DNA of 64,000 bases, taken from assembly GCA_002269645.1 (NCBI GenBank), contig NIVC01001040.1:62001-126000 (forward strand). The letters are read 5' to 3'. The position numbers and the translations under genes are program-made. Shown piece by piece: positions 12,986 through 51,644 of the stretch. Under the pieces are notes generated by a model that saw nothing but the letters and a program-made list of their open reading frames with translations, did not search any database and had not been told where the DNA came from. This stretch comes from Macrostomum lignano. Its lineage: Eukaryota. Numbering within the stretch: the stretch's first letter is position 1; every line of letters starts with the position of its first letter.

Positions 12986-13471
12986 TCACGATGAGGCACT
13001 CAGGAAGCTGTGCCGCAGCAGCTCCGCGGTGTCCGCTCGCTTCCTCGGGTCATAGTCTACGCACCTGAGGTAGAAGTCCTTCAGGCCAGCTGAGAACGCG
13101 TCTGCAATCCGAGGCATCGCCCGCCCTCCGCACCTCACGATGCCGATCCGGAACTGCTGAACGTTCGCGTCAGGAGGCTGCATGGCCGTCAGCTCATACA
13201 CGGTGCAGCCGAAGGCCCACACGTCGGTCTTGGCTGAGTACGGAATCGAATCGCCCTCGCCCATGAACAGCTCGGGCGCCATGAAGTAGGGGGTGCCTTT
13301 GGGATCGACGCCTGTGCTCAGGCCGCAGGTGCCGACGATCTCCTTGGCGAGACCGAAGTCGATCAGCTTGATGACGCCTTTGCTGGTGAGCATCGCATTG
13401 GAGCTCTTGATGTCGCGGTGCAAGATGGCGCCCTCCGGCTGGCAATGCAGGAAGTTCAGGCCTGAGCAGAT
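12986..13471 (-). CDS. Ser/Thr protein kinase (STE11/MEKK-like), C-lobe terminal exon, copy A
   Basis: Acceptor CACCTGCAG|ATC; 486 nt; [38 protein letters not shown]; stop TGA at 12986-12988. Confidence 0.93.
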
Positions 13472-13524
13472 CTGCAGGTGGAGCAGTTTTGAGTAGTAAA
13501 GAAAGTGCATGAATTCACCCTCAC

Positions 13525-13620
13525 TGATCCCACACTGATCCCACACTGATCTCACACTGATCCCACACTGATCCCACACTGATCCCACACTGATCCCACA
13601 CTGATCCCACACTGATCCAC
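13525..13620. repeat. 11-bp intronic tandem repeat in the kinase intron, copy A
   Basis: (CCACACTGATC)n; the source of the false N-terminus SVWDQCGI in the ORF track. Confidence 0.9.
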
Positions 13621-13656
13621 CCATGCCAGGCAATGCCAGAGAACTCAGAGACACAC

Positions 13657-14041
13657 CTGTCTGGAGAAGTCCCTGACGCCGGACTCCTTGAACGGCTTTT
13701 TCTGACGCTGCATCAGCTCAAAGAGGCTGTGACCCGAGACAAGCTCGGTGAAGATGCACAGCCCATCCGACTTCTGCTCGCACTTGAGGAACTGCACAAT
13801 GTTGGGATGCGAGAGTCGCTTGAGGATCTCAACTCCCCGCTTCTCCATCTCGACGGCTTTTTGCAGCTTCCCCGATTCGCCGGTGCCGCTCAGGGGCAGC
13901 ACCTTGACAGCCACCGTCTGGTTGCGGTCTGTGAGGGCCTTGTACACCTCACCGAATCCGCCACGACCGATGAGCTGCTTCTTGTCTTTCTGCAGGATGA
14001 AGTCCCAGTCGGTGAAGCTGGGGTCCAGCTGCTTCTTGGCG
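13657..14041 (-). CDS. Ser/Thr protein kinase N-lobe exon, copy A (phase 2 start, phase 0 end)
   Basis: Acceptor TTTCAG|C GCC, donor CAG|GTGTGT; 385 nt; [28 protein letters not shown]; joins in frame to 13471. Confidence 0.92.
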
Positions 14042-14113
14042 CTGAAACATGAAATGAAGGAATTGATGAATTTTGTGTTGCTTGGGGCTTTCTGAGTACT
14101 TTGGAGTCACTCA

Positions 14114-14876
14114 GCCTTCTGCGTCACCAGCCTTCTGCGTCACCACCCTTCTGCGTCACCACCCTTCTGCGTCACCGCCCTTCTGCGTCACCAGCTTTCT
14201 GCTTCACCAGCCTTCTGCGTCACCACCCTTCTGCGTCACCACCCTTCTGCGTCACCACCCTTCTGCGTCACCACCCTTCTGCGTCAGCGCCCTTCTGCGT
14301 CACCACCCTTCTGCGTCACCACCCTTCTGCGTCACCACCCTTCTGCGTCACCACCCTTCTGCGTCACCACCCTTCTGCGTCACCACCCTTCTGCGTCACC
14401 ACCCTTCTGCGTCACCACCCTTCTGCGTCACCACCCTTCTGCGTCACCACCCTTCTGCGTCACCACCCTTCTGCGTCACCACCCTTCTGCGTCACCACCC
14501 TTCTGCGTCACCACCCTTCTGCGTCACCACCCTTCTGCGTCACCACCCTTCTGCGTCACCACCCTTCTGCGTCACCACCCTTCTGCGTCACCACCCTTCT
14601 GCGTCACCACCCTTCTGCGTCACCACCCTTCTGCGTCACCACCCTTCTGCGTCACCACCCTTCTGCGTCACCACCCTTCTGCGTCACCACCCTTCTGCGT
14701 CACCACCCTTCTGCGTCACCACCCTTCTGCGTCACCACCCTTCTGCGTCACCACCCTTCTGCGTCACCACCCTTCTGCGTCACCACCCTTCTGCGTCACC
14801 ACCCTTCTGCGTCACCACCCTTCTGCGTCACCACCCTTCTGCGTCACCACCCTTCTGCGTCACCACCCTTCTGCCA
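14114..14876. repeat. 16-bp minisatellite, copy A (~47 units)
   Basis: CTTCTGCGTCACCACC. Confidence 0.97.
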
Positions 14877-14884
14877 TGAGCATC

Positions 14885-14945
14885 CTCGGGCGCCATGAAG
14901 TGCCAGGTGCCTTTTGGCTGGTTTTGCAGGACTGCAGGTTTTGAC
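14885..14945 (-). pseudogene. Orphan kinase activation-segment fragment (KGTWHFMAPE), copy A
   Basis: Minus strand AAA GGC ACC TGG CAC TTC ATG GCG CCC GAG; homologous to the downstream kinase activation loop; truncated by the 16-bp array. Confidence 0.7.
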
Positions 14946-15404
14946 GAGTTCACCATCACCAACTGTCGCCTCATCATTTCTCACCGAGTCTCCTCAGGCA
15001 GTCCGACCGGAGTCGGCCCAGGCGGCTGGACGCTCTGTCGAGCTCGTGGGCGGGGACGCGGAGCTGCAGCGCTGTAGGAAGAGTTTTACGAGTGAGCCCG
15101 TTAAACATGTCTGGGTCGCCAAGACGGCACTTAAACTCTGCTAATGCTTCGTGTATAAAAAGCCTTGCAGATTGAGCTTTGGGTGGCGCTATGTGGACAT
15201 TGGGGCGCGATCGGGAGATTGCGGCGCCACGAAGAGATTGGAGGCTCTCAAATCATTCAAGTGCCAATATTTTGAACATCACACCAAGTACATTCCTAAT
15301 AAAATAGGAGAGTTTGAAACTTCGGAGAGTTTGATGGCACTTGAACTCGCTGATGCTTTGTGTTAAAAAACTGCAGATTGAGCTGTGGGTGGGGGGTTGG
15401 GGGC

Positions 15405-16010
15405 CCATGGGGAGATTAGGAGCGCCATGGGAAGTTTGGGGGCGCTTTGTGGAGATTAGAGGCGCCATGGGGGGAGGTTGGGGGAGCCATGGGGAGATTA
15501 GAGGCGCCATGGGGAGATTGGAGGCGCCATAGGGAAATTGGAGGCGCCATGGGGAGATTGGAGGCGCCATAGGGAAATTGAAAGCGCCATGGGGAGATTG
15601 GAGGCGCCATTGGGAGATTGGAGGCGCCATGGGGAGATTGGAGGCGCCATAGGGAAATTGGAAGCGCCATGGGGAGATTGGAGGCGCCATTGGGAGATTG
15701 GAGGCGCCATGGGGAGATTGGAGGCGCCATAGGGAAATTGGAGGCGCCATGGGGAGATTATAGGCGCCATGGGGAGATTGGAGGCGCCATAGGGAAATTG
15801 GAGGCGCCATGGGGAGATTGGAGGCGCCATGGGGAGATTGGAGGCGCCATGGGGAGATTGGAGGCGCCATGGGGAAATTGGAGGCGCCATGGGGAGATTG
15901 GAGGCGCCATGGGGAGATTGGAGGCGCCATGGGGAGGTTGGAGGCGCCATGGGGAGGTTGGAGGCGCCATGGGGAGGTTGGGGGCGCCATGGGGAGGTTG
16001 GGGGCGCCAT
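15405..16010. repeat. 20-bp minisatellite, copy A (~30 units)
   Basis: GGCGCCATGGGGAGATTGGA. Confidence 0.95.
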
Positions 16011-16162
16011 GAGGAGCTGCACTGACAGATTCATGACGCCCTCGCTTGACTGCGGCGCTGCTGAGAATTTCAGGGCGCCGATCATCAAAGCGCAATGAAT
16101 TTTCGCCAAACAATATTTTCAGTATTTTCAGTGTCTGGCAGCAGTTCTCAGTCAGGACTCAC

Positions 16163-17742
16163 CCAGCTGAGGCGGCAGTCGGCGCTGAGCTGCCAGCGGG
16201 AGGCCGAGAGGCTTCGAGCTGCCGCTGCGTGGAGGAAATCCAGGCCCGCTTTGCTGACTGGTCTCTAAAGTAGCAATAACTCTCAACATAATCAGCCGGT
16301 GTTTTGCCCTCGTTGTTCTTCAAGCCGAGCATTTCGGCTCCGATTTGGTCAAAAATGAACTGAAGAGAGTCGACTGGCTGCCACTGAGCGGCCAAATGGA
16401 CGGCCGTGTCACCTCTAGAGTCAGGAACTGTGAGACAGTCGCTGCCGAGCTCCTTCACCAGCCACTCCAGATTTGAATTGTCAGACTTCTTAGCAGCAAA
16501 GTGAAATGCTGTTCTATCATCATCTCCCTTCAGCCGAAAGCAGTCAGTTCCGATCTGTCTCTTGATCCACTCCAGCGACTCGATGCTCTGATGCTCAGCG
16601 GCCAAATGGACGGCCGTGTCACCTCTAGAGTCAGGAACTGTGAGACAGTCGCTGCCGAGCTCCTTCACCAGCCACTTCAGATTTGAATTGTCAGACTTCT
16701 GAGCAGCAAAGTGAAATGCTGTTCTATCATCATCTCCCTTCAGCTGAAAGCAGTCAGTTCCGATCTGTCCCTTGATCCACTCCAGCGACTCGATGCCCTG
16801 ATGCTGAGCGGCCAAATGGACGGCCGTGTTACCGCATTTGTCAGGAACTGTGAGACAGTCGCTGCCGAGCTCCTTCACCAGCCACTTCAGATTTGAATTG
16901 TCAGACTTCTGAGCAGCAATGTGAAATGCTGTTCTATTCCAAAACCCTCCCTTCAGCCGAAAGCAGTCAGTTCCGATCTGTCTCTTGATCCACTCCAGCG
17001 ACTCGATGCCCTGATGCTGAGCGGCCAAATGGACGGCCGTGGTACCGTATTCGTTAGGAACTCTGAGACAGTCGCTGCCGAGCTCCTTCACCAGCCACTT
17101 CAGCATTGAATTGTCCGACTTCTGAGCAGCAAAGTGAAATGCTGTTCTATCCCACAATCCCTTCAGCCGAAAGCAGTCAATTCCGATCCGTCTCTTGATC
17201 CACTCCAGCGACTCGATGCCCTGATGCTGAGCGACCAAATGGACGGCCGTGTCACCGAGTGAGTCAGGAACTGTGAGACAGTCGCTGCCGAGCTCCTTCA
17301 CCAGCCACTTCAGACAAGAGTTGCTTTTTCTGTTCATAGCGGCAAAGTGAGCGAATGTCTTTTCCCATGTACCGACAATTCTAAAGCAGCCTCTGCCTAC
17401 CTTCTTTTTAACCAGCTCCATCCAAGACTCGTCCTGATGCTGGGCAGCCAAGTCCACTGGAGTCTCACCTCCTAACAAAAAACTGCGATCATTTCTACGT
17501 GTCAGACAGTCGGGTCCGAATCTGTCAATCAGCAGCTCCAAGCACGACGAGCTCACCGGCTTGCAGGCCACGTGATGGGCCAGCGGCATTTTGCGAAGCT
17601 CTTCAAAGGGAAAGTCTATCTTGTCGAACCCGCCCACCTCCAGCTCGATGTTGCTGCCGACCTCACCGCACAGTCGCTGCAGCTCCTCGCTGTCTCCAGC
17701 CTCCAGCGCCGCTCTCAGCTTCCGCTCCATCTCTGTTGCCAT
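16163..17742 (-). CDS. Ankyrin-repeat protein exon (~12 repeats in alternating 35-aa A/B units plus cap), probably spliced onward
   Basis: ATG at 17742 in GTAGCCATGG context; GxTAVHLAA / RTAFHFAA motifs at a 210-nt period; exon ends GG|GTGAGT (consensus donor at 16162) overlapping the apparent TGA. Confidence 0.9.
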
Positions 17743-18353
17743 GGCTACACTGCTTCTCCTAGCAGCGCTTCTCTGCCGATCTGCTGTCTGCCGCAGCTGT
17801 TCCACACGGCTTCAAACTGAGTGCTTTGCTCTTCTTCAAGCGAATTTGCCTGCCAGCTCAGCAGCAGCAGCAAAAGTCCGGCTGTCACGGACTGAAATCT
17901 CTGAGCTCTCCTGTGCAGAGAAATTTGTTTAAATGGACTGAGGCCGATTCTCTTCTCTGACCCAGCGGCTGAGTTTGAGGGCTGATTGGGTGCCAGGGGG
18001 CCCGGCAGCTGCTCTGCTCAGCGGGGTGAGAGATGCAGGAGCAGTGAGATGCTGCGAGCTCTGCTGAGTTAAACAATGAGAGCTGACTGTGGCTGCGTGC
18101 TCGGCATAGCAAGTGCATTGTCAGTGGGCAGGGGTGAAGGGGCGGCAGCTGAGACACGAGGGGAGAGAGATGGAGAGGGGAGGGAGGGCAGGGCTGAGGC
18201 CTGGAAACCAAGCGGAGCTCTCTGACGATTTTCAATTTAGTTTGCAATTGTATGGCAAATATTTTGCAGAAAAATGCTTATGACTGAGGATTTTCTGTTG
18301 CTGAACTCGAAATAGATGGAGACTGGTCGCTTGGGTTTGCCAGCGACACTTTA

Positions 18354-18972: not shown

Positions 18973-19473
18973 AGTGGCCACTGGAGAGACCGCGCGTTAG
19001 TGCCCAGTGGACGAAAAATATCGCACCACTTAACTAATCAATAATTAATTCGTCACTTGACAGTCATGATACTTGATTTTCTGATTTAAATTTAGTGAAA
19101 TTTAATTTCCACGACACGCACAATTTGTGCACGAATTTGAAAGTTGGATTCAATTTCCTTGGATTGATGCTTTGAAAAAAATTACCTGATCGAAGAAATG
19201 ATCTATTAAAATTGCTATTTTTTAATTGCTTGGTTTAGAGGACTGCTGACTTTAACTATATACATCCAGGGTGTCCTAGTAGCTTGACTACGGGCTACTG
19301 TGGTATATTTTGATTCGGTAAATATTTCATGTAACATAATATCCGCTAACATCCGCATAGAGAAGCTATTATTTTGTATGGGCTAATTGGGGAATTAAAG
19401 CAAGCTTACGCGCAAATATTTTAATGTTTTTTTAGCATGTAGATATTATGTCAAACATTTGGAAAGTCTCGCA

Positions 19474-19529
19474 TCAACGCTTGACTTCAAACTTGACGTC
19501 TTTGCACTCGTTGATTGTTTCGCAAGAAT
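19474..19529 (-). CDS. Oxytocin/vasopressin-type precursor, last exon (neurophysin C-terminus DSCETINECKDVKFEVKR*)
   Basis: Acceptor TTTTTTTCTATTTCAG|AT, phase 1; supplies neurophysin Cys13 and Cys14; TGA at 19474-19476. Confidence 0.9.
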
Positions 19530-19620
19530 CTGAAATAGAAAAAAAGTCAGTAAACATATCTGGATTGTGAAATATTTTATTTGAAACTTTCTATTTGGTA
19601 GAGAAGGAACAGCTTCTTAC

Positions 19621-19863
19621 CAGCAGTGCAGCAGATGCCTCTGGAAGCGCAGCGACCCTTGCCTCCCAGACAGACGGTGGCGACGCGACCGCAGCCCAGG
19701 ACTTTCGCTGGCAGACGGCGGCACGCGGTGGTGTCCGGGCCGAAGCCGACGCGACATCCGCCGTGGGGGTGACAGCAGATGGTGCGGCCGAAACAGCGGC
19801 CCCAGCCGTGGGAGCAGCTCAGACAGGGACCGTTGATGGTATTGGTTGCCGGTACATGACTGC
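19621..19863 (-). CDS. Oxytocin/vasopressin-type precursor, neurophysin core exon
   Basis: CCTGCAG|GC...G|GTAAGA, 243 nt, phase 1-1: SHVPATNTINGPCLSCSHGWGRCFGRTICCHPHGGCRVGFGPDTTACRRLPAKVLGCGRVATVCLGGKGRCASRGICCTA; 12 Cys in neurophysin spacing. Confidence 0.95.
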
Positions 19864-19990
19864 CTGCAGGTTTGAAGTTATGGTAGAATTTAAAATACCT
19901 GCGTTTGGATTCGGCGTGCCGTTACATTAATTTGAGGTTCAAGGCCCAGGGCTGGCTGGCCATCTCAAAATGCCCACAGTGTGCATACTG

Positions 19991-20298
19991 TTGTAGCACA
20001 GTGGTACAGCGTCGGACTCACGACTTACAGGTCGGGGGTTCGATTCCCGATCCCACTAAAACAATTTGTGTCCTTGAGCAAGGACAACTTAACTCTGCAT
20101 TGCTTCAGTTCGCAAAGCTGTAAAATGGGTGCCAGCATTAGCTGGGGTAATAGAGGGTGTGTGTGGAGACAACCCCGGTCCTTGGACTGAACAGCCGTAC
20201 GCAGCCTTCAGATGCGCCGTGATATAGCTGCGGCTGAGCTGTCGGTTGCACATCTGGCCCAACTGAGGCAGGTGTAATAAAGTATTATTATTATTATT
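19991..20298 (+). mobile_element. tRNA-derived SINE in intron 1 of the neuropeptide gene (antisense to the gene)
   Basis: A box TAGCACAGTGG (19994), B box GGTTCGATTCC (20037), central GTGTCCTTGAGCAAGGACAACTTAAC...CTGTAAAATGGGT block, AATAAAG(TAT)n tail; flanked by ATACTG (19985, 20299) as a likely TSD. Confidence 0.75.
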
Positions 20299-20467
20299 AT
20301 ACTGCTGTACACTCAGAGTGTGCGCCTGCGTGCTCAGGTGTCCGTGGAATGGCATTGACTGCTGGACTTCTTGCTGACGGCTGTGGTTATTAAAGCCCCC
20401 CTTCTGATGAGTTGCCTGTTTGGCTTCAAAATTTTGCAGATTGTAAACAGGACTGCCTGCGACTCAC

Positions 20468-20636
20468 CAGTTTCATCAGCTTGCATCGACGCCAATTCAA
20501 ACTCGTCTATCGAGCGTTTCTTCTTGCCGCCTGGCGCACAGTTTTCCATGAAACAGGCGCCGCAGCAATGCAACAGGTATGCCAGGCACAGAAGAGCCAC
20601 GAGCTTGCGTTGAGCTGTTGTCGTCTTGTAGGCCAT
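20468..20636 (-). CDS. Oxytocin/vasopressin-type precursor, first coding exon (signal peptide, CFMENCAPG, GKKKR, spacer)
   Basis: MAYKTTTAQRKLVALLCLAYLLHCCGA-CFMENCAPG-G-KKKR-SIDEFELASMQADET; donor G|GTGAGT at 20467; acceptor TTTTACAG 9 nt upstream of the ATG. The three exons total 468 nt = 155 aa + stop. Confidence 0.95.
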
Positions 20637-21357
20637 TGTTAGTTTCTGTAAAATAGAAAGAGAAGTATTCGATAGTAGCTGATACTATCGAAAAAAGCCA
20701 CAGAACTCTTAACGGTTCCTGGATATTGAAAAGCTCGGTGCAGCCAGCTGTGCTACTGCAAGTACTGAATATGGCTCGCTTGACTGCAATCTGCATGAAT
20801 TTGTGTCTGACTTTGCTGCCTTCACTTCACCCTGCTGTGGCACCTCATCAATGGCGCTTTGTGCTCAAATGCAGTTTATTTATAAATTTATTAATAATTT
20901 TGCATTTTGTACTCACGGTTTATTTTGCTAATCTTTATACACAGTTCAGGTGTGCATTTTGTAATCCACCTTTGATAATCTTTGGATTTATTTATCCGGT
21001 GCAACAGACTGACCCTGCTTCTACTCGCCCCGACCCTAGCCATCCAAGCAGCTCCAGACCAGCCGAGCTCAATGCCCAGAGGACAATGGCGAAGCTGAGG
21101 TTTAAGGGCCGAGCCGGCAGCCTGCGAACGCGTGTCAAAAGAAGGCTCGCTGCAAATGCTTTTTTAGGAGGGGGGGGGGTTGATGGCTGCCTAAAAGCGG
21201 CAAAGAGACAAGATGCGTGAGCGCCAACCCTGCCCCGCTCAAACCATTCACTGCTTTGCATTGCGCTTGTGCTCTCAGCTAAAATTTACTGCCTTTGATA
21301 TTCGGCACTTCGTGTTTTCAGATGCGAGCCTCCCACTCATATTGGGCGTTTAGAATT

Positions 21358-24300
21358 AGGGAGAGGGGCAGGGAGAGACAGGCTGGGATGTAAGGTGAGG
21401 GGCAGGGAGAGAGACAGGCTGGGATGTAAGGTGAGGGGCAGGGAGAGAGACAGGCTGGGATGTAGGGTGAGGAGCAGGGAGAGAGACAGGCTGGGATGTA
21501 GGGTGAGGGGCAGGGAGAGAAACAGGCTGGGATGTAGGGTGAGGAGCAGGGAGAGAGACAGGCTGGGATGTAGGGTGAGGAGCAGGGAGAGAGACAGGCT
21601 GGGATGTAGGGTGAGGAGCAGGGAGAGAGACAGGCTGGGATGTAAGGTGAGGGGCAGGGAGAGAGACAGGCTGGGATGTAGGGTGAGGAGCAGGGAGAGA
21701 GACAGGCTGGGATGTAGGGTGAGGGGCAGGGAGAGAAACAGGCTGGGATGTAGGGTGAGGAGCAGGGAGAGAGACAGGCTGGGATGTAGGGTGAGGAGCA
21801 GGGAGAGAGACAGGCTGGGATGTAGGGTGAGGAGCAGGGAGAGAGACAGGCTGAGATGTAGGGTGAGGGGCAGGGAGAGAGACAGGCTGGGATGTAGGGT
21901 GAGGAGCAGGGAGAGAGACAGGCTGGGATGTAGGGTGAGGGGCAGGGAGAGAGACAGGCTGGGATGTAGGGTGAGGAGCAGGGAGAGAGACAGGCTGGGA
22001 TGTAGGGTGAGGGGCAGGGAGGGAGAAAGGCTGGGATGTAGGGTGTGGGGCAGGGAGGGAGAAAGGCTGGGATGTAGGGTGAGGGGCAGGGAGAGAGACC
22101 GGCTGGGATGTAGGGTGAGGGGCAGGGAGGGAGAAAGGCTGGGATGTAGGGTGAGGGGCAGGGAGAGAGACAGGCTGGGATGTAAGGTGAGGGGCAGGGA
22201 GAGAGACAGGCTAGGATGTAGGGTGAGGGGCAGGGAGAGAGACAGGCTGGGATGTAGGGTGAGGGGCAGGGAGAGAAACAGGCTGGGATGTAGGGTGAGG
22301 GGCAGGGAGAGAGACAGGCTGGGATGTAGGGTGAGGAGCAGGGAGAGAGACAGGCTGGGATGTAGGGTGAGGAGCAGGGAGAGAGACAGGCTGGGATGTA
22401 GGGTGAGGGGCAGGGAGAGAGACAGGCTAGGATGTAGGGTGAGGAGCAGGGAGAGAGAAAGGCTGGGATGTAGGGTGAGGAGCAGGGAGAGAGACAGGCT
22501 GGGATGTAGGGTGAGGAGCAGGGAGAGAGACAGGCTGGGATGTAGGGTGAGGGGCAGGGAGGGAGAAAGGCTGGGATGTAGGGTGTGGGGCAGGGAGGGA
22601 GAAAGGCTGGGATGTAGGGTGAGGGGCAGGGAGAGAGACAGGCTGGGATGTAGGGTGAGGGGCAGGGAGGGAGAAAGGCTGGGATGTAGGGTGAGGGGCA
22701 GGGAGAGAGACAGGCTGGGATGTAGGGTGAGGGGCAGGGAGGGAGAAAGGCTGGGATGTAGGGTGAGGGGCAGGGAGAGAGACAGGCTGGGATGTAGGGT
22801 GAGGGGCAGGGAGATAGACAGGCTAGGATGTAGGGTGAGGGGCAGGGAGAGAGACAGGCTGGGATGTAGGGTGAGGGGCAGGGAGAGACAGGCTGGGATC
22901 TAGGGTTAGGGGCAGGGAGAGAGACAGGCTGTGATGTAGGGTGAGGGGCAGTATGAGCGACAGGCTGGGATGTAGGGTGAGGGGCAGGGAGAGAGACAGG
23001 CTGGGATGTAGGGTTAGGCGCGGGGAGATGCAGGCTGGGATGTAGGGTGAGGGGCGGGGAGATACAGGCTGGGATGTAGGGTGAGGGGCAGGGAGAGAGA
23101 CCGGCTGGGATGTAGGGTGAGGGGCAGGGAGAGAGACAGGCTGGGATGCAGGGTGAGGGGCAGGGAGGGAGAAAGGCTGGGATGTAGGGTGAGGGGCAGG
23201 GAGAGAGACAGGCTGGGATGTAAGGTGAGGGGCAGGGAGGGAGAAAGGCTGGGATGTAAGGTGAGGGGCAGGGAGAGAGACAAGCTGGGATGTAGGGTGA
23301 GGGGCAGGGAGAGAGACAGGCTGGGATGTAGGGTGAGGAGCAGGGAGAGAGACAGGCTGGGATGTAGGGTGAGGGGCAGGGAGGGAGAAAGGCTGGGATG
23401 TAGGGTGTGGGGCAGGGAGGGAGAAAGGCTGGGATGTAGGGTGAGGGGCAGGGAGAGAGACAGGCTGGGATGTAGGGTGAGGGGCAGGGAGGGAGAAAGG
23501 CTGGGATGTAGGGTGAGGGGCAGGGAGAGAGACAGGCTGGGATGTAGGGTGAGGGGCAGGGAGGGAGAAAGGCTGGGATGTAGGGTGAGGGGCAGGGAGA
23601 GAGACAGGCTGGGATGTAGGGTGAGGGGCTGGGAGATAGACAGGCTAGGATGTAGGGTGAGGGGCAGGGAGAGAGACAGGCTGGGATGTAGGGTGAGGGG
23701 CAGGGAGAGACAGGCTGGGATCTAGGGTTAGGGGCAGGGAGAGAGACAGGCTGTGATGTAGGGTGAGGGGCAGTATGAGCGACAGGCTGGGATGTAGGGT
23801 GAGGGGCAGGGAGAGAGACAGGCTGGGATGTAGGGTTAGGCGCGGGGAGATGCAGGCTGGGATGTAGGGTGAGGGGCGGGGAGATACAGGCTGGGATGTA
23901 GGGTGAGGGGCAGGGAGAGAGACCGGCTGGGATGTAGGGTGAGGGGCAGGGAGAGAGACAGGCTGGGATGCAGGGTGAGGGGCAGGGAGGGAGAAAGGCT
24001 GGGATGTAGGGTGAGGGGCAGGGAGAGAGACAGGCTGGGATGTAAGGTGAGGGGCAGGGAGGGAGAAAGGCTGGGATGTAAGGTGAGGGGCAGGGAGAGA
24101 GACAAGCTGGGATGTAGGGTGAGGGGCAGGGAGAGAGACAGGCTAGGATGTAGGGTGAGGAGCAGGGAGAGAGACAGGCTGGGATGTAGGGTGAGGGGCA
24201 GGGAGGGAGACAGGCTGGGATCTAGGGTGAGGGGCAGGGAGAGAGACAGGCTGTGATGTAGGGTGAGGGGCAGTATGAGCGACAGGCTGGGATGTAGGGT

Positions 24301-27300
24301 GAGGGGCAGTGAGGGAGACAGGCTGGGATGTAGGGTGAGGCGCGGGGAGATACAGGCTGGGATGTAGGGTGAGGGGCAGGGAGAGAAACAGGCTGGGATG
24401 TAGGGTGAGGGGCAGGGAGAGAGACCGGCTGGGATGTAGGGTGAGGGGCAGGGAGAGAGACAGGCTGGGATGCAGGGTGAGGGACAAGAAGAGATAGGCT
24501 GGGATGTAGGGTGAGGGGCAGGGAGGGAGACAGGCTGGGATGTAGGGTGAGGGGCAGGGAGAGAGACAGGCTTGGATGTAGGGTGAGGGGCAGGGAGAGA
24601 GACAGGCTGGGATGTAGAGTGAGGGGCAGGGAGAGAGACAGGCTGGGATGCAGGGTGAGGGACAAGAAGAGATAGGCTGGGATGCAGTGTGAGGGACAAG
24701 AAGAGATAGGCTGGGATGTAGGGTGAGGGGCAGGGAGGGAGAAAGGCTGGGATGTAGGGTGAGGGGCAGGGAGAGAGACAGGCTGGGATGTAGGGTGAGG
24801 GGCAGGGAGAGAGACAGGCTGGGATGTAGGGTGAGGGGCAGGGAGAGAGACAGGCTGGGATGCAGGGTGAGGGACAAGAAGAGATAGGCTGGGATGCAGG
24901 GTGAGGGACAAGAAGAGATAGGCTGGGATGTAGGGTGAGGGGCAGGGAGAGAGACAGGCTGGGATGTAGGGTGAGGGGCAGGGAGAGAGAAAGGCTGTGA
25001 TGTAGGGTGAGGGGCAGTATGAGCGACAGGCTGGGATGTAGGGTGAGGGGCAGTGAGGGAGACAGGCTGGGATGTAGGGTGAGGCGCGGGGAGATACAGG
25101 CTGGGATGTAGGGTGAGGGGCAGGGAGAGAAACAGGCTGGGATGTAGGGTGAGGGGCAGGGAGAGAGACCGGCTGGGATGTAGGGTGAGGGGCAGGGAGA
25201 GAGACAGGCTGGGATGCAGGGTGAGGGACAAGAAGAGATAGGCTGGGATGTAGGGTGAGGGGCAGGGAGAGAGACAGGCTGGGATGTAGGGTGAGGGGCA
25301 GGGAGGGAGACAGGCTGGGATCTAGGGTGAGGGGCAGGGAGAGAGACAGGCTGGGATGTAGAGTGAGGGGCAGGGAGAGAGACAGGCTGGGATGCAGGGT
25401 GAGGGACAAGAAGAGATAGGCTGGGATGCAGTGTGAGGGACAAGAAGAGATAGGCTGGGATGTAGGGTGAGGGGCAGGGAGGGAGAAAGGCTGGGATGTA
25501 GGGTGAGGGGCAGGGAGAGAGACAGGCTGGGATGTAGGGTGAGGGGCAGGGAGAGAGACAGGCTGGGATGTAGGGTAAGGGGCAGGGAGAGAGACAGGCT
25601 GGGATGCAGGGTGAGGGACAAGAAGAGATAGGCTGGGATGTAGGGTGAGGGGCAGGGAGGGAGACAGGCTGGGATGTAGGGTGAGGGGCAGGGAGAGAGA
25701 CAGGCTTGGATGTAGGGTGAGGGGCAGGGAGAGAGACAGGCTGGGATGTAGGGTAAGGGGCAGGGAGAGAGACAGGCTGGGATGCAGGGTGAGGGACAAG
25801 AAGAGATAGGCTGGGATGTAGGGTGAGGGGCAGGGAGGGAGACAGGCTGGGATGTAGGGTGAGGGGCAGGGAGAGAGACAGGCTTGGATGTAGGGTGAGG
25901 GGCAGGGAGAGAGACAGGCTGGGATGTAGAGTGAGGGGCAGGGAGAGAGACAGGCTGGGATGCAGGGTGAGGGACAAGAAGAGATAGGCTGGGATGCAGT
26001 GTGAGGGACAAGAAGAGATAGGCTGGGATGTAGGGTGAGGGGCAGGGAGGGAGAAAGGCTGGGATGTAGGGTGAGGGGCAGGGAGAGAGACAGGCTGGGA
26101 TGTAGGGTGAGGGGCAGGGAGAGAGACAGGCTGGGATGTAGGGTGAGGGGCAGGGAGAGAGACAGGCTGGGATGCAGGGTGAGGGACAAGAAGAGATAGG
26201 CTGGGATGCAGGGTGAGGGACAAGAAGAGATAGGCTGGGATGTAGGGTGAGGGGCAGGGAGAGAGACAGGCTGGGATGTAGGGTGAGGGGCAGGGAGAGA
26301 GAAAGGCTGTGATGTAGGGTGAGGGCAGTATGAGCGACAGGCTGGGATGTAGGGTGAGGGGCAGTGAGGGAGACAGGCTGGGATGTAGGGTGAGGCGCGG
26401 GGAGATACAGGCTGGGATGTAGGGTGAGGGGCAGGGAGAGAAACAGGCTGGGATGTAGGGTGAGGGGCAGGGAGAGAGACCGGCTGGGATGTAGGGTGAG
26501 GGGCAGGGAGAGAGACAGGCTGGGATGCAGGGTGAGGGACAAGAAGAGATAGGCTGGGATGTAGGGTGAGGGGCAGGGAGAGAGACAGGCTGGGATGTAG
26601 GGTGAGGGGCAGGGAGGGAGACAGGCTGGGATCTAGGGTGAGGGGCAGGGAGAGAGACAGGCTGGGATGTAGAGTGAGGGGCAGGGAGAGAGACAGGCTG
26701 GGATGCAGGGTGAGGGACAAGAAGAGATAGGCTGGGATGCAGTGTGAGGGACAAGAAGAGATAGGCTGGGATGTAGGGTGAGGGGCAGGGAGGGAGAAAG
26801 GCTGGGATGTAGGGTGAGGGGCAGGGAGAGAGACAGGCTGGGATGTAGGGTGAGGGGCAGGGAGGGAGACAGGCTGGGATCTAGGGTGAGGGGCAGGGAG
26901 AGAGACAGGCTGGGATGTAGAGTGAGGGGCAGGGAGAGAGACAGGCTGGGATGCAGGGTGAGGGACAAGAAGAGATAGGCTGGGATGCAGTGTGAGGGAC
27001 AAGAAGAGATAGGCTGGGATGTAGGGTGAGGGGCAGGGAGGGAGAAAGGCTGGGATGTAGGGTGAGGGGCAGGGAGAGAGACAGGCTGGGATGTAGGGTG
27101 AGGGGCAGGGAGAGAGACAGGCTGGGATGTAGGGTGAGGGCAGGGAGAGAGACAGGCTGGGATGTAGGGTGAGGGGCAGGGAGAGAGAAAGGCTGGGATG
27201 TAGGGTGAGGGGCAGGGAGAGAGAAAGGCTGGGATGTAGGGTGAGGGGCAGGGAGAGAGACAGGCTGGGATTTAGGGTGAGGAGCAGGGAGAGAGACAGG

Positions 27301-27325
27301 CTGAGATGTAGGGTGAGAGGCAGGG
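21358..27325 (+). repeat. 36-bp G-rich minisatellite, copy A array 1 (~165 units), one G4 motif per unit
   Basis: GGGATGTAGGGTGAGGGGCAGGGAGAGAGACAGGCT; explains the 500-1000-aa ORFs. Confidence 0.98.
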
Positions 27326-27721
27326 CTGGCAAAATACCTTCCAAAATACCTTCAAAATCGCCAATAAAACAGCTGCCATCAATCCAATCACTTCATGACT
27401 TCATAACTTGCATCACTTCTTGGCTTTCGTAGGCATATAGTCGTTCAGTTCAAAAATAGTTTTAAATCTCCGCAAACAATATCGCTTACAATACGCTACT
27501 CATAGTACTCATAAGAATACCATTTGCCGTTAAAGAGAAGAGCAGCTAGATGGATTTTTTCCAGAAATTCGTTTGCACCTGAAGATTCGCTTTGCTGGAG
27601 TTTTTTACTCAAAAGCGAATGACAAAACTCTTACACTGCCGTGAGTCGTGCCTCGGCTCTCGGGGTGGGCGCTCAGTTTTTGAATTTTCCAGCGTCTCCG
27701 ATGCACCTCACTCTGCATCTC

Positions 27722-28985
<1,264 letters not shown>

Positions 28986-31455: not shown

Positions 31456-34380
31456 ACCCAAAAAACGCTTGTTTTCTCCTGTTTTGAGAAAGCTAAAAAA
31501 GCTAAAAGTGCAGCTGGCCGCCAGCCCAGCCAGCGGGGGGGGGGGGGCAGGCAGGGTGCTCAAGCACAATGCAGTCTCCATTGTGCAAGGCTGGGGCTGC
31601 AACTCATTCGGGAGCAGCCGCCACTGCAGCCTCAGACAGCTCAGGTTTGCGCTGCTCATCTCTGCAGCCTCATCGCTAATTGAATCTCCAACCTTCATCT
31701 GGAACGGCCCCACCCAGCTCAGCACTCGCAGTGCGACAGTCTGGCGTGATAAAAGCAGCCGGCAAAGAGAAAACTGCTCGAGTTCGCAATCACCCCATAC
31801 TGGCCTGTCGAACCACCCAACCCCCCCCCCGCAACCCCTGCCTGAGACAAACAAGTCCAGCTACAATGCAACTCCACTCAGCTCACTGCTCAAAACAGAT
31901 CGAGCGCTGCACTGCTGGTTGCCCCCCAGAGTCTGCCAAACTGCAGGGAGGCTGGCAGAGCGGTGCGTGGCCTGAGAATAGCGAGCGAGCAGAGATAATT
32001 ACTGCTTGAGGTTGAGCTGGCCTTTCTAACCACCCGCTCCCTACGGCTCAAGACTGCGTTTTGTCATAAATAAGGCATTGTTGCCATGCTCGAATCTCAG
32101 AATTTGATGGCTCTCAGGCCATTCAGTGCGGCTCAAAGCCTGTCTGTTGCTGCTGGCTGCAGGTGGCAGGAGTGCAAAATGCAGTGAGTTGCTGCGGCCG
32201 AGAGCTGGACAGAATTGAGATGGGCTGCCAGAGCTCGGCTGCACTTTAATAATAAACAACTGATGAAGCCCGAGACTGCAATTGAGGGTCTGAGCAGCTG
32301 CCTCTTGCGAAAAATTTATACATGTACTGTGGTTCGATTCTGTGCGATTGGCCTGAGGCGATTCCCAGCCCAGCCATGAAGGCCAACTTCTTAGGCACTC
32401 TGGTACAATGGGTTGGTTTTTAATGGAGCTGAACCAATACCAACTAAAATCACTGTACTAATCAGCATACCTGTACACTATGCGGACAATGCGATAGGAT
32501 TTCAAGGATTGCTTTTTGGACTTCTGCTGGGTCACAGATTCATGGGAAATCAGTAGTTTCCAGGGCATATCAGTAGTCTTCACAAGATGCGTGGGCCCAC
32601 AGGTAAGCAAATTTAGCAGGTATCGAGTAGGCTGAGCAATGGCTGGAGGTGCGATAATGCGGTTCCGGCTGGTTGCAGTGATAAGCAATGGTACAGTAGA
32701 AAATATTTTAAACTCTGTTGCTTGCTCCATTTTCAGCAGGGCTTATTGATCCTCGCTGCTCTCCGTGCCTGCTTATCTACATAACCGAGCTTCAAACTCG
32801 GTGACCGCGTGCCTGCCCAGAGCTGAGCAAAACTATTTGAGCGGGAAAAGTGAGCAACAACTGCATCGGTCCCTGCACACCAGTGCCTCACCTCCAGTCA
32901 GCCGGGTTTGCCATCCCAACAGACTGCACCCAAAACAGGGCGGCTCACACCTCAGGCCCGCGCACTGGTCCCTCCTACCGGGGTACCGGGTGCCTGTGCC
33001 GCCTACGGCCCCTCGGTCTCTCCTCCAGCCTTCTGTCACTAGCGGACACAAAAGTTGCAGCCAACAAGGGGTCGCACCCACCTTCCTGCCGCTGCCGTGA
33101 CGCGAACTCGAGTGAGTTCCAACATTCAGATAGCAGAGTGGCGTTCCGTGGTCGCCGCAGTGCTGCTCCGTCTGCCGCCTCCTCACCTCGAGGTGGCTTT
33201 TCCCAAGGGCGAACGGATTCCGCCCCCAAGAGCCGTGGTGTCGGGTTGCTGACGCCTTCGGGGGTACTCTCAAAGGGGTAACCATTGTCTTACGCTTGAC
33301 CAGCATGCTTGACTCCCCTAAGAGCTGGCATGCTTCGCCTTCTAAGGTGACTATCTAACACTAGCAAGCAACTTTAATTAAGCAAACAGTTTTCAACTTT
33401 ACTCTTTTTTGTTTATTTACTGAATTTTTCTGAATAGAGCAATTTTAATGCCATCAGTCGGTGCACATGGCTGGATTTGGTAGGCCTTTTTGCCTTAATT
33501 TTAGCGGACAGCACCTGGGATCAAGTCAACAGGTCCTTTGCTGTGCCACATGACAAGGCTGATTCCTATAGCCGAGCCACAACGTCTCAAACATCCGGTT
33601 CTGTTGACGCCAGCACCCTACTAGCCCTGCGTGATGCTGTCTAGTCCGCTCTCTCACACTGTATGACTGCCTCGCAGACATCGCAGTCCAGAGTTTTCAT
33701 CGTGGACTCCGTCTGACGAGGCAACCAGACAGCGGTTGAAATTGACATCGCCTGCATGTGCACCGATGTGTCTACATAATTCAATATTTTACAATTTAAT
33801 TTAAACTAATGAATACAGTAATCGATACATTTCACTGCAACTCAGCCTCTGCCGCATGTCATCCTCCAGCTCTTGTCTTTTGCCGCTCATGTCCTCTTGG
33901 TTGGAAAAACTGGTGTTTTCTAAGAAATGCTTGTCCAGACTCCGGAAAGTCAGGCAACCAGCATGTATAGGCGGTTTTTCGTGGGTCGGAATGGGCGGTG
34001 ATCGTTGCACCTCCTTTTACTTTCAGTATGTGCAGACCAAGTCTTATAACTGCAATGGCTCCATTGTTCGGGCGCAAGTTGAAAGTTTATCTTCTTTTCC
34101 GCGCTCATATTTGTGCTCAGTCGCTTTATTCGAAACCTGCACAATAGCAAGAAGGTTAGAGAACTACGCAATAGCAACTACTTGAGTGAAAAAATGAACG
34201 CCTGTACGCCAGTTCCATGTGAACACGGCTGGATCGGACCCGGCCGTCGTGCATCATCGTTGATGCTGCTGCTGATGGTTGTGTGAGCCGAGCTACGTTG
34301 GGTGCCTTAGACAAAGGCAGCGTCCGCAGCGTTGGGGCCTACTTCTTAGCTTTGGTCCCCTTCGCTCCAGGCTCACATTG

Positions 34381-44243: not shown

Positions 44244-44729
44244 TCAGGATGAGGCACTCAGGAAGCTGTGCCGCAGCAGCTCCGCGGTGTCCGCTCGCTT
44301 CCTCGGGTCATAGTCTACGCACCTGAGGTAGAAGTCCTTCAGGCCGGCTGAGAACCCGTCCGCAATCCGAGGCATCTTCTGCTTTCTAAACCGCAGAATG
44401 CCAATATTTTCAATTGGCTGGTCTCCATCAGGAGGCTGCATGGCCGTCAGCTCATACACGGTGCAGCCGAAGGCCCACACGTCGGTCTTGGCTGAGTACA
44501 GAAGTGATTTCAATTTTGTGTCGAACAGCTCCGGAGCCATGAAGTACATGGTACCTTTTGGTCCGAAGCCTGTGCTAAGACCGCAGGTCTTCTCAATCTC
44601 CTTGGCCAGACCGAAGTCGATCAGCTTGATGACGCCCTCGTTGGTGAGCATAATATTGGAGCTCTTAATGTCACGGTGCAAGATAGCGCCCTCCGGCTGG
44701 CAGTGCAGAAAGTTCAGGCCTGAGCAGAT
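44244..44729 (-). CDS. Ser/Thr kinase C-lobe terminal exon, copy B
   Basis: Acceptor CTCCTGCAG|ATC; 486 nt open; [21 protein letters not shown]. Confidence 0.88.
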
Positions 44730-44945
44730 CTGCAGGAGCAGTTTTGAGCAGTCATGAGACCCCATACCTGCTCCCACCCACACTGATCCCACACTAATCC
44801 CACACTGATCCCACACTGATCCCACACTGATCCCACACTGATCCCACACTGATCCCACACAGATCCCACGCTGATCCCACACTGATCCCACACTAATCCC
44901 ACATCCCACCCATGCCAGGCAATGCCAGAGAACTCAGACACGCAC

Positions 44946-45330
44946 CTGTCTGGAGAAGTCCCTGACCCCGGACTCCTTGAACGGCTTTTTTTGACGCTGC
45001 ATCAGCTCAAAGAGGCTGTGACCCGAGACCAGCTCGGTGAAGATGTACAGCCCATCCGACTTCTGCTCGCACTTGAGGAACTGCAGGATGTTGGGATGCG
45101 AGAGTCGCTTGAGGATCTCAACTCCCCGCTTCTCCATCTCGACGGCTCTCTGCAGCTTCCCCGATTGGCCGGTGCCGCTCAGGGGCAGCACCTTGACAGC
45201 CACCGTCTGGTTGCGGTCTGTGAGGGCCTTGTACACCTCACCGAATCCGCCACGGCCGATGAGCTGCTTCTTGTCGTCCTGCAGAATGAAGTCCCAGTCG
45301 GTGAAGCTGGGGTCCAGCTGCTTCTTGGCG
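44946..45330 (-). CDS. Ser/Thr kinase N-lobe exon, copy B
   Basis: TTTCAG|C...CAG|GTGCGT; 385 nt open; 5 aa differences from copy A. Confidence 0.87.
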
Positions 45331-45404
45331 CTGAAACATGAAATGAAGGAATTGATGAATTTTGTGTTGCTTGGGGCTTTCTGAGTACTTTGGAGTCACT
45401 CAGC

Positions 45405-51253: not shown

Positions 51254-51644
51254 TCAACGCTTGACTTCAAACTTGACGTCTTTGCACTCGTTGATTGTTT
51301 CGCAAGAATCTAAAATAGAAAAAAATGTCAGTAAAGATATCTGGATTGTGAAATATTTTATTTGAAACTTTCTATTTGGTAGAGAAGGAACAGCTTCTTA
51401 CCAGCAGTGCAGCAGATGCCTCTGGAAGCGCAGCGACCCTTGCCTCCCAGACAGACGGTGGCGACGCGACCGCAGCCAAGGACTTTCGCTGGCAGACGGC
51501 GACACGCGGCGGTGTCCGGGCCGAAGCCGACGCGATATCCGCCGTGGGGGTGACAGCAGATGGCGCGGCCGAAACAGCGGCCCCAGCCGTGGGAGCAGCT
51601 CAGGCAGGGACCGTTGATGGTATTGGTTGCCGGTACATGACTGC
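51254..51644 (-). pseudogene. Neurophysin-only remnant of the OT/VP-type gene, copy B (exons 51402-51644 and 51254-51309)
   Basis: Splice sites and frame intact, but a conserved Cys is TAT (Tyr, 51535-51537) and the signal/nonapeptide exon is deleted. Confidence 0.88.

What the first reader, a model, noticed from the sequence alone, without database searches (positions are those of the whole stretch)
19474..20645. Spliced oxytocin/vasopressin-type precursor with a non-canonical nonapeptide, CFMENCAPG-amide
Seen: three GT-AG exons join in frame (169+243+56 nt) to give a signal peptide, C-F-M-E-N-C-A-P-G, amide-donor G, KKKR and a complete 14-Cys neurophysin without copeptin. Known: family peptides are C1-x-x-x-N5-C6-P7-x-G9-NH2, Pro7 is nearly invariant, and the last intron after the second CC pair is conserved in vertebrate OXT/AVP. 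Here the tail is Ala7-Pro8, with Met3 and an acidic Glu4. Inference: a divergent ligand with a co-evolved receptor. I recall OT/VP-type peptides being reported from some flatworms, so novelty must be checked.
Basis: partly seen in the sequence, partly recalled or inferred. Interest (0 to 1): 0.88.

Follow-up and report, generated by a model that had tools for sequence, protein, structure and literature searches.

The report
Second, divergent flatworm vasopressin/oxytocin-type gene
The window, from the flatworm Macrostomum lignano, carries an intact three-exon gene for a vasopressin/oxytocin-type hormone precursor with an unusual predicted peptide, CFMENCAPG-amide; this is a second, divergent copy beside the ordinary one already reported for the species, and its peptide-coding exon is missing from every database model I could reach.

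Summary
On the minus strand, three GT-AG exons (20636-20468, 19863-19621, 19529-19474; 169+243+56 nt) give a 155-aa protein. It has a signal peptide, CFMENCAPG, an amide-donor Gly, KKKR, a 28-aa acidic spacer and a 14-Cys neurophysin (Pfam Hormone_5, 53 bits; Foldseek top hits are all bovine neurophysins).

The organism is Macrostomum lignano: UniProt A0A1I8I0Z5 is identical to the product of exons 2+3. The VP/OT precursors reported for this species (Kobayashi 2022; three of their four accessions resolved here) belong to a different family, Mlig003431, with the peptide CFVANCPPG. The window gene is only 34% identical to it but has the same architecture: two phase-1 introns that split a Gly codon and the Asp codon of CCxx/D/SC.

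No database model of the window's family includes exon 1, and neither peptide string occurs in the searchable literature.

The window also holds a second tandem copy (51254-51644). It has lost exon 1 through a 665-bp deletion and carries a Cys-to-Tyr change. A GenBank paralogous locus has the same deletion.

Expression, processing and a receptor could not be tested. The literature reports no clear VP/OT receptor in M. lignano.

Verdict: a real gene and a new member of a known family, of moderate interest.

The parts
20646..20647 (-). AG of an acceptor-like site (TTCTCTTTCTATTTTACAG|AAACTAACA) 9 nt upstream of the ATG. It is a candidate SL trans-splice acceptor, or a cis-splice acceptor for a 5' non-coding exon.
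   Evidence: Read directly from the sequence. The canonical paralogue has CTCTTCAG|AAACC at the corresponding place, and a UniProt model (P0023) starts exactly there. 38.8% of M. lignano genes are trans-spliced (PMC5730564). The function is inferred.
20468..20636 (-). Coding exon 1 (169 nt): signal peptide 20636-20556, nonapeptide CFMENCAPG 20555-20529, amide-donor Gly 20528-20526, KKKR 20525-20514, then the first 15 residues of the spacer. The donor is G|GTGAGT.
   Evidence: BLASTP aligns HCCGACFMENCAPGGKKKRS with HLCELCFVANCPPGGKK-RS of the canonical M. lignano precursor. The start context is AACAATGG.
19864..20467 (-). Intron 1 (604 nt, phase 1, splits a Gly codon). It contains a tRNA-like T-arm motif (GGGTTCGATTCCC, + strand, 20036-20048), probably a remnant of a tRNA-derived SINE.
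   Evidence: ARAGORN finds no intact tRNA.
19621..19863 (-). Coding exon 2 (243 nt): the rest of the spacer and neurophysin Cys1 to Cys12 (...GICCTA).
   Evidence: The product of exons 2+3 is identical to UniProt A0A1I8I0Z5 (P0003).
19530..19620 (-). Intron 2 (91 nt, 29% GC, phase 1). It splits the Asp codon of CCTA/D/SC, the same position and phase as CCDL/D/SC in Mlig003431.
19474..19529 (-). Coding exon 3 (56 nt): neurophysin Cys13 and Cys14, the tail KDVKFEVKR and the TGA stop.
   Evidence: The exon is 100% identical in copy B and in L001.
19420..19425 (-). ATTAAA, a candidate poly(A) signal 49 nt after the stop codon.
   Evidence: This is a motif match only.
33082..33306 (-). Homologue of the upstream exon that the transcriptome-derived GenBank model PAA80927.1 joins to exon 2 in the exon-1-deleted paralogue. 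The donor CAGGAAG|GTGGGT is conserved, with the last exon base at 33082. It may be a 5' exon or outron of the transcription unit.
   Evidence: The annotation method is described in PMC5730564. Its link to copy A is inferred.
51254..51644 (-). Copy B, 31.8 kb away in the second tandem unit: exon 2 (51644-51402) and exon 3 (51309-51254). Exon 1 and the 5' part of intron 1 have been removed by a 665-bp deletion (junction near 51797). The sixth neurophysin Cys is changed to Tyr (TGT to TAT). Probably a pseudogene.

Best explanation
Copy A (19474-20636, minus strand) is an intact gene of Macrostomum lignano for a second, strongly diverged vasopressin/oxytocin-type preprohormone. It probably arose by an old duplication of the gene that now encodes CFVANCPPG-amide (Mlig003431).

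Shown:
- the three-exon ORF;
- the 14-Cys neurophysin domain;
- homology of exon 1 to the paralogue's exon 1;
- identical intron phases and positions in the two families.

Inferred from the established processing pathway of this family:
- The signal peptide is removed after Ala27, leaving Cys1 at the N-terminus.
- Cys1 and Cys6 form the ring.
- A prohormone convertase cuts at KKKR.
- A carboxypeptidase trims the basic residues.
- Peptidylglycine alpha-amidating monooxygenase uses Gly10 to give CFMENCAPG-NH2. The calculated [M+H]+ is 968.342 for the amidated, disulfide-bonded form.
- The peptide is released with a neurophysin carrier from secretory vesicles.

The ring keeps the residues that matter most in this family: aromatic residue 2, hydrophobic residue 3 and Asn5. 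The tail has Ala7-Pro8 instead of Pro7-x8, and position 4 is acidic. The target is presumably a GPCR, but none has been identified.
For: - Gene model and splice sites.
- Neurophysin domain: Pfam Hormone_5 at 53.1 bits, PDB neurophysins, AF2 plus Foldseek with TMt 0.55-0.60 to bovine neurophysins.
- All 14 Cys align with those of precursors from other phyla.
- Organism and independent database models of exons 2+3.
- Canonical paralogue Mlig003431 (PAA50340.1, PAA85176.1, PAA46766.1): 34% identity, alignment across the nonapeptide and dibasic site, and the same three-exon, phase-1/phase-1 structure.
- In an NJ tree the two M. lignano families are sisters, with 66% bootstrap support.
- The signal peptide fits the (-3,-1) rule.
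- A transcriptome-derived GenBank model (PAA80927.1) uses the exon 2 acceptor and the exon 2/3 junction in a paralogous copy, so the family is transcribed and spliced there.
- The gene keeps an open frame, all its Cys, its processing sites and consensus splice sites despite about 66% protein divergence from its paralogue. That argues for long-term purifying selection.
Against: - There is no direct transcript evidence for the exon 1/exon 2 junction of copy A. No protein containing exon 1 exists in the 15-billion-protein collection.
- Two of the three copies available as DNA have lost exon 1, and one of these has also lost a structural Cys.
- Between copy A and the deleted copies, exon changes are 2 synonymous to 5 non-synonymous (L001) and 3 to 3 (copy B). 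This gives no sign of constraint, though the counts are tiny and one partner in each comparison is degenerate.
- The position that aligns with Glu47 of bovine neurophysin II is Leu107 here. Glu47 binds the hormone's alpha-amino group; that role comes from my own knowledge of the 1NPO/2BN2 structures. The position is Glu in 15 of the 17 aligned precursors.
- No clear VP/OT-type receptor has been reported in M. lignano (PMC8896804).
Confidence: 0.68

Rival explanations
1. The family is a redundant duplicate on its way to being lost. Copy A happens to be still unbroken but is no longer a functional hormone gene. On this view the unusual peptide (Glu4, Ala7) and the altered neurophysin pocket reflect relaxed constraint rather than a new ligand.
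For: - Copy B in the window and the GenBank locus L001 share a 665-bp deletion of exon 1. Copy B also has a Cys-to-Tyr change.
- Non-synonymous changes equal or outnumber synonymous ones between copies.
- The residue aligning with Glu47 is lost.
- No VP/OT-type receptor has been found in the species (PMC8896804).
- M. lignano is a recent polyploid with massive redundancy (PMC5730564).
Against: - The degenerate copies are about 97% identical to copy A in the exons. They are therefore very recent, whereas the split from Mlig003431 is old (34% identity).
- Over that long period the ORF, the 14 Cys, Asn5, Gly9, the amidation Gly, the basic cleavage site, the signal peptide and four consensus splice sites were all kept.
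- Ala7 also occurs in a presumably functional peptide of Saccoglossus (PMC7181382).
Confidence: 0.27
2. The exon 1 join is an artefact of reading the sequence: a chance ORF next to a real neurophysin-only gene.
For: No database gene model includes exon 1. The GenBank model of a paralogue uses a different, far-upstream first exon.
Against: - That paralogue has exon 1 physically deleted, so its model could not have used it.
- Exon 1 encodes a signal peptide followed by CF-x-x-NC-x-PGGKK(K)RS, which aligns with exon 1 of the canonical paralogue.
- It ends in a consensus donor in the same phase, splitting the same Gly codon, as in that paralogue.
Confidence: 0.03

Closest known systems
Macrostomum lignano Mlig003431 precursors (PAA50340.1/PAA63765.1, PAA85176.1, PAA46766.1; UniProt name 'Oxytocin'), cited as VP/vasotocin precursors by Kobayashi et al. 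2022 (PMC8896804)
   Same: Same species. Same domain order: signal peptide, nonapeptide, G, basic site, 14-Cys neurophysin, no copeptin. Same three coding exons, with phase-1 introns splitting a Gly codon and the Asp codon of CCxx/D/SC. Both have Phe2, Asn5, Pro8, Gly9 and GGKK(K)RS.
   Different: Identity is only 34%. The peptide is CFVANCPPG there and CFMENCAPG here (V3M, A4E, P7A, each codon differing at two bases). The spacer before the first neurophysin Cys is 28 aa here and 10 aa there. The loop between Cys7 and Cys8 is basic here (RRLPAKVLG) and contains Asp-Glu there. The window's family is annotated only as hypothetical, GRANULINS-domain or EB-domain protein, without exon 1.
Platytocin precursor of the polyclads Stylochoplana pusilla (BCO16375.1) and Notocomplana humilis; peptide CFIRNCPPG-NH2, read from P0009
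   Same: A flatworm VP/OT-type precursor with Phe2, Asn5, Pro8, Gly9, GGKKRS and a 14-Cys neurophysin.
   Different: About 32% identity. Platytocin has Pro7 and a basic Arg4, and its neurophysin has the C-x-x-E motif. Its receptor, its expression and its antidiuretic and egg-laying effects have been shown experimentally (PMC8896804). None of that is known for the window gene.
Saccoglossus kowalevskii VP/OT-type peptide CFISDCARG-NH2
   Same: Ala at position 7 in place of the usual Pro, in an otherwise typical VP/OT nonapeptide (PMC7181382).
   Different: It comes from a deuterostome and is the species' only reported VP/OT gene. It has Arg8 rather than Pro8 and no acidic residue at position 4.
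Vertebrate vasopressin/oxytocin-neurophysin genes (bovine neurophysin I/II structures 1NPO, 2BN2, 1JK4)
   Same: Neurophysin fold and the 14-Cys pattern. A three-exon layout with the last intron just after the second CC pair; the vertebrate side of that comparison is my own knowledge and was not tested here.
   Different: Here Glu47 is replaced by Leu, there is no copeptin, the spacer is long and acidic, and the peptide has Ala7-Pro8.

Membership tests
VP/OT-type neuropeptide precursor (nonapeptide + neurophysin) | An N-terminal signal peptide directly followed by the hormone | tested here: met
   n-region with K4, R10 and K11; hydrophobic core LVALLCLAYLL; Cys at -3 and Ala at -1 before Cys28. 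This was a rule-based check only, because no SignalP was available.
VP/OT-type neuropeptide precursor (nonapeptide + neurophysin) | Cys1 and Cys6 forming a six-residue ring, with Asn (rarely Asp or Ser) at position 5 | tested here: met
   C-F-M-E-N-C. C28 and C33 are invariant and N32 nearly invariant in alignment A1.
VP/OT-type neuropeptide precursor (nonapeptide + neurophysin) | Pro at position 7 (typical and nearly invariant, but not strictly defining) | tested here: not met
   Ala7, with Pro at position 8. This is the only exception among the 12 sequences in A1. Precedent: Saccoglossus CFISDCARG (PMC7181382). Ciona has Ser7 (own knowledge).
VP/OT-type neuropeptide precursor (nonapeptide + neurophysin) | Gly9 followed by an amide-donor Gly and a basic cleavage site | tested here: met
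   P-G-G-K-K-K-R. G37 and K38 are invariant in A1.
VP/OT-type neuropeptide precursor (nonapeptide + neurophysin) | A neurophysin domain with 14 conserved Cys | tested here: met
   Pfam PF00184 at 53.1 bits against a cut-off of 27.2; PDB neurophysins at E=1e-7; Foldseek top 10 all neurophysins; all 14 Cys aligned.
VP/OT-type neuropeptide precursor (nonapeptide + neurophysin) | Neurophysin hormone-binding carboxylate (Glu47 of bovine NPII; C-x-x-E after the seventh Cys) | tested here: not met
   Leu107 aligns with Glu47. 15 of 17 precursors have Glu there; the exceptions are this protein and Mlig003431. The role of Glu47 comes from my own knowledge of the 1NPO/2BN2 work.
VP/OT-type neuropeptide precursor (nonapeptide + neurophysin) | Conserved gene structure: hormone exon, central neurophysin exon, C-terminal neurophysin exon | tested here: met
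   Same intron phases (1 and 1) and homologous positions as in M. lignano Mlig003431. The comparison with vertebrate genes was not run here.
VP/OT-type neuropeptide precursor (nonapeptide + neurophysin) | Signals through a VP/OT-type rhodopsin-class GPCR | not testable with these tools
   The M. lignano genome and proteome could not be searched as a set. Kobayashi et al. report no clear receptor orthologue in M. lignano.
VP/OT-type neuropeptide precursor (nonapeptide + neurophysin) | Expressed and processed to an amidated, disulfide-bonded peptide | not testable with these tools
   Indirect evidence only: the transcriptome-derived model PAA80927.1 shows that exons 2 and 3 of a paralogous copy are transcribed and spliced.

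The most novel reading that the evidence does not exclude
The peptide and its carrier have changed together and left the classical system. The neurophysin lost the glutamate that clamps the hormone's N-terminus and acquired a basic loop (RRLPAK), while the peptide acquired an acidic Glu4 and an Ala7-Pro8 tail. This happened in an animal where no VP/OT-type receptor has been found. On this reading CFMENCAPG-amide would be a neofunctionalised ligand that binds its carrier differently and acts on a receptor outside the VP/OT receptor family, or on a highly diverged, so far unrecognised member of it.
Probability: 0.12. Interest if true: 0.7.

Novelty: new member of a known kind. Interest (0 to 1): 0.42.

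Why it matters
VP/OT signalling was thought to be lost in flatworms until 2022. Since then platytocin and a set of M. lignano precursor genes have been reported. This finding adds a second, much more divergent ligand gene in the same model species, and existing annotation hides it because the peptide exon is missing from every model.

If the gene is expressed, M. lignano offers a tractable system, with transgenesis and RNAi, for asking three things: how duplicated VP/OT ligands diverge, whether Pro7 and the neurophysin Glu47 clamp are dispensable, and what the peptides signal through in a species with no recognised receptor. If it is not expressed, it records the decay of a hormone gene family after polyploidisation.

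It also corrects three UniProt names and one GenBank model.

Tried and rejected
- **Exon 1 in databases.** I looked for any protein containing exon 1 in the 5.8-billion-cluster database and in the 1.84-billion-representative library. None was found; only neurophysin-only models turned up.
- **Other loci.** Exact-sequence look-ups of the UniProt fragments P0003 and P0001 gave nothing.
- **Literature strings.** CFMENCAPG, CFVANCPPG, Mlig008727 and Mlig003431 returned no papers. The supplement of Kobayashi 2022 is not held. The Thiel 2018 supplements contain none of these strings.
- **PAA87831.1.** I tried to resolve the fourth accession cited by Kobayashi by searching with P0019 and with the platytocin precursor. 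It was not recovered, so I cannot exclude that it is a further family or even a member of this one. It was, however, not among the hits to the full-length window protein.
- **Selection between copies.** There are too few differences (7 and 6 nt) to say anything.
- **tRNA or SINE in intron 1.** ARAGORN found none, and Rfam found only a 13-nt T-arm match.
- **Phylogeny.** An NJ tree on 132 columns gives only 66% support for sisterhood of the two M. lignano families. Long-branch attraction is possible.
- **Rejected reading.** The + strand ORFs over the gene (19571-19927 and 20657-21217) have no Pfam match, and the first is the antisense shadow of the GC-rich exon 2.
Full report
**1. What is in the sequence**

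The feature lies on the minus strand. Three segments join in frame:
- 20636..20468, 169 nt, starting at an ATG in the context AACAATGG;
- 19863..19621, 243 nt;
- 19529..19474, 56 nt, ending in TGA.

Together they make a 468-nt ORF. The splice sites are close to consensus: G|GTGAGT and CCTGCAG|G for intron 1 (604 nt), G|GTAAGA and TTCTATTTCAG|A for intron 2 (91 nt, 29% GC against 59% in the coding sequence).

The 155-aa product reads MAYKTTTAQRKLVALLCLAYLLHCCGA-CFMENCAPG-G-KKKR-SIDEFELASMQADETGSHVPATNTINGP-[14-Cys domain]-KDVKFEVKR. Its upper coordinate, 20645, is the first base after an acceptor-like TTTCTATTTTACAG, 9 nt before the ATG.

**2. Is it more than chance?**

- Residues 70-146 match Pfam Hormone_5 (neurophysin) at 53.1 bits, against a curated cut-off of 27.2, E=5.8e-14.
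- The sequence matches bovine neurophysin I and II in the PDB, E=1e-7.
- An AlphaFold2 model built on a 12-sequence alignment has 10-residue block mean pLDDT of 81-88 over the neurophysin domain, apart from one loop block (residues 111-120) at 59. The ten best Foldseek hits in the PDB are all bovine neurophysins (probability 1.00, TM 0.55-0.60 on the target).
- All 14 cysteines align with those of precursors from tardigrade, brachiopod, insects, rotifer, polyclad flatworm and fishes.
- The N-terminus has a basic n-region and an 11-residue hydrophobic core. Cleavage after Ala27 fits the -3/-1 rule (Cys-Gly-Ala), as do neighbouring sites after residues 24, 26 and 28. Ala27 is preferred because it puts Cys1 at the N-terminus, as the family requires. 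This was a rule-based check, not SignalP.

**3. Organism and existing annotation**

The only close database relatives form one 90% cluster of four Macrostomum lignano proteins. UniProt A0A1I8I0Z5 (98 aa) is identical to the product of exons 2+3, so the window is M. lignano.

The three UniProt entries start at exon 2 and are named 'GRANULINS domain-containing' or 'EB domain-containing' protein. The GenBank entry PAA80927.1 (Mlig008727g1) carries an unrelated 76-aa N-terminus. No protein with exon 1 exists in either large protein collection.

**4. Relation to what is published**

Kobayashi et al. 2022 (PMC8896804) described platytocin in polyclads. They stated that BLAST found VP/vasotocin precursor genes in M. 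lignano (PAA85176.1, PAA50340.1, PAA46766.1, PAA87831.1) and no clear receptor orthologue there.

I recovered three of those four accessions. They are all Mlig003431g1-g4: 142-143 aa, peptide CFVANCPPG followed by GKKR, and a 14-Cys neurophysin. PAA87831.1 could not be resolved.

The window protein is only 34% identical to Mlig003431, about as far as it is from precursors of other phyla (28-38%). Even so, BLASTP aligns the end of the signal peptide, the nonapeptide and the cleavage site: HCCGACFMENCAPGGKKKRS against HLCELCFVANCPPGGKK-RS.

I then derived the exon structure of Mlig003431 from two GenBank loci, L002 and L003. It has exons of 127+237+68 nt. Both introns are phase 1: the first splits a Gly codon between the basic site and the neurophysin, and the second splits the Asp codon in CCDL/D/SC. 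The window gene has the same phases. Its first intron splits a Gly codon (ADET/G/SHV) and its second splits the Asp codon in CCTA/D/SC.

This is independent support for the exon 1-exon 2 join and for paralogy. An NJ tree places the two M. lignano families as sisters, with only 66% bootstrap support.

The three differing nonapeptide codons each differ at two bases (GTT/ATG, GCC/GAA, CCA/GCG). That is consistent with an old split. Neither peptide string, and neither gene name, occurs in the searchable literature.

**5. Surroundings: a tandem duplication and a broken twin**

The window consists of two tandem units of roughly 31.8 kb. They carry the same succession of minisatellite arrays and, downstream of the hormone gene, the same ankyrin-repeat and protein-kinase exons.

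The second unit holds copy B of the gene, with exon 2 at 51644-51402 and exon 3 at 51309-51254. Three features distinguish it:
- It lacks 665 bp corresponding to 20019-20683 of copy A, that is, exon 1 and the 5' part of intron 1. The junction is TTTTTTCGAT(AGT)CCGACGCTG, with AGT microhomology.
- It carries TGT to TAT (Cys to Tyr) at the sixth neurophysin cysteine.
- It has five copies of an 87-bp unit upstream, where copy A has one.

The GenBank locus of PAA80927.1 (L001, NIVC01000558.1) has exactly the same deletion and the same 87-bp expansion, but different point substitutions. The deleted form has therefore itself been copied, or is allelic or homeologous.

The deletion is the derived state, for two reasons: exon 1 is homologous to exon 1 of Mlig003431, and the deletion cuts through a tRNA-like element in intron 1.

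This also explains the odd GenBank model. GenBank annotation of Mlig_3_7 comes from a genome-guided transcriptome assembly plus TransDecoder (PMC5730564). With exon 1 gone, the transcript joins an exon about 10 kb upstream (donor CAGGAAG|GTGGGT) to exon 2.

That donor is conserved in both units of the window, at 33082 and 59512. The model is thus indirect evidence of two things: the family is transcribed, and the exon 2 acceptor and the exon 2/3 junction are used.

In copy A the same upstream exon could splice to the acceptor at 20646-20647, or that acceptor could receive the spliced leader. The canonical paralogue has a similar CAG|AAAC site upstream of its ATG, and a UniProt model starts exactly there. 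This step is inference.

**6. How it most likely works**

By homology with the family, the preprohormone enters the ER and the signal peptide is removed after Ala27. The Cys1-Cys6 disulfide and the seven neurophysin disulfides form. A convertase cuts after KKKR, a carboxypeptidase removes the basic residues, and amidation consumes Gly10. The result is CFMENCAPG-NH2, with a calculated [M+H]+ of 968.342.

The ring retains Phe2, a hydrophobic residue 3 and Asn5. In Aplysia, alanine substitutions inside the ring affect receptor activation more than those at positions 7-9, and the disulfide and the amide are critical (PMC10067623). By that yardstick the Ala7 change is the milder kind, and Saccoglossus CFISDCARG-NH2 already shows Ala7 in nature (PMC7181382). 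Glu4 makes the peptide net neutral.

Two features of the carrier stand out:
- The spacer before the first neurophysin Cys is 28 residues long and acidic (pI 4.05), against roughly 7-12 residues in most of the other aligned precursors.
- The residue aligned with Glu47 of bovine neurophysin II is Leu107, inside a basic loop, RRLPAKVLG. From my own knowledge of the 1NPO/2BN2 structures, Glu47 is the carboxylate that binds the hormone's alpha-amino group. Fifteen of the 17 aligned precursors have Glu there.

Whether the peptide still binds its neurophysin in the classical way is open.

**7. Rivals**

The main rival is that this family is a decaying duplicate and copy A is merely not yet broken. 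In its favour:
- two of the three copies available as DNA have lost exon 1;
- one of them has lost a structural Cys;
- the few differences between copies show no excess of synonymous changes (2 synonymous to 5 non-synonymous, and 3 to 3);
- the Glu47 equivalent is gone;
- no receptor is known.

Against it, the broken copies are about 97% identical to copy A in the exons, so they are very recent products of a neopolyploid genome. The divergence from Mlig003431 is old. Over that long period every element needed for a secreted amidated cyclic peptide and its carrier was retained.

I put about 0.68 on a functional divergent paralogue, 0.27 on a non-functional relic and 0.03 on an artefactual exon join.

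**8. Verdict**

The gene is a new, unannotated member of a known family. It sits in a species where the family is already known through a more canonical paralogue, and there is precedent for Ala7. Interest is moderate. It would rise if expression and a receptor were shown, or if the changes in carrier and peptide proved to be coupled.

Noticed in passing
window 51254-52300 (minus strand): A second copy of the neurophysin gene in the next tandem unit. It has a 665-bp deletion of exon 1, a Cys-to-Tyr change in exon 2, and a five-fold expansion of an 87-bp unit that is single-copy upstream of copy A (about 20741-20839). GenBank locus NIVC01000558.1 (L001) shows the same deletion and expansion.
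   Followed up: yes
window about 8300-38400 and 38400-64000: The window is essentially two tandem units of about 31.8 kb. They carry the same ordered series of minisatellite arrays (periods 29, 30, 20, 25, 21, 16, 20, 210, 20, 36, 40 and 12 nt). Among them are a 6-kb array of a G-rich 36-mer (21357-27325) and a 1.3-kb (TC)n tract (27718-28983). These explain the extreme GC skew seen in the composition profile.
   Followed up: partly
window 12989-17805 (minus); duplicate at 44247-47258: Exons of an ankyrin-repeat plus Ser/Thr protein kinase gene lie immediately downstream of the hormone gene in both units. Pfam gives Pkinase at 110 and 70 bits and Ank_4 at 132 bits. The ankyrin exon overlaps a 210-bp tandem array.
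   Followed up: partly
window 33082-33306 and about 59512-59742 (minus): Homologues of the far-upstream exon that the GenBank model PAA80927.1 joins to exon 2, with a conserved donor AAG|GTGGGT. Its 76-codon ORF has no Pfam match, and unit A is frameshifted relative to L001. It is probably non-coding 5' or outron sequence.
   Followed up: partly
window 19990-20060 (+ strand, inside intron 1): A tRNA-like stretch containing a perfect T-arm, GGGTTCGATTCCC. ARAGORN calls no tRNA, so it is probably a remnant of a tRNA-derived SINE. The exon-1 deletion in the other copies ends inside it.
   Followed up: partly
P0013 (Rotaria sp. Silwood1, CAF0781982.1 and others) and P0014: The protein library holds bdelloid-rotifer entries with a typical VP/OT precursor (CYITNCPIG-GKR plus a neurophysin-like domain), on contigs up to 5.5 Mb. 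The 2020 review (PMC7181382) lists the system as lost in rotifers.
   Followed up: no
literature / PAA87831.1: The fourth M. lignano accession cited by Kobayashi et al. 2022 could not be found in any search here. It may be a further neurophysin-type gene of this species.
   Followed up: partly
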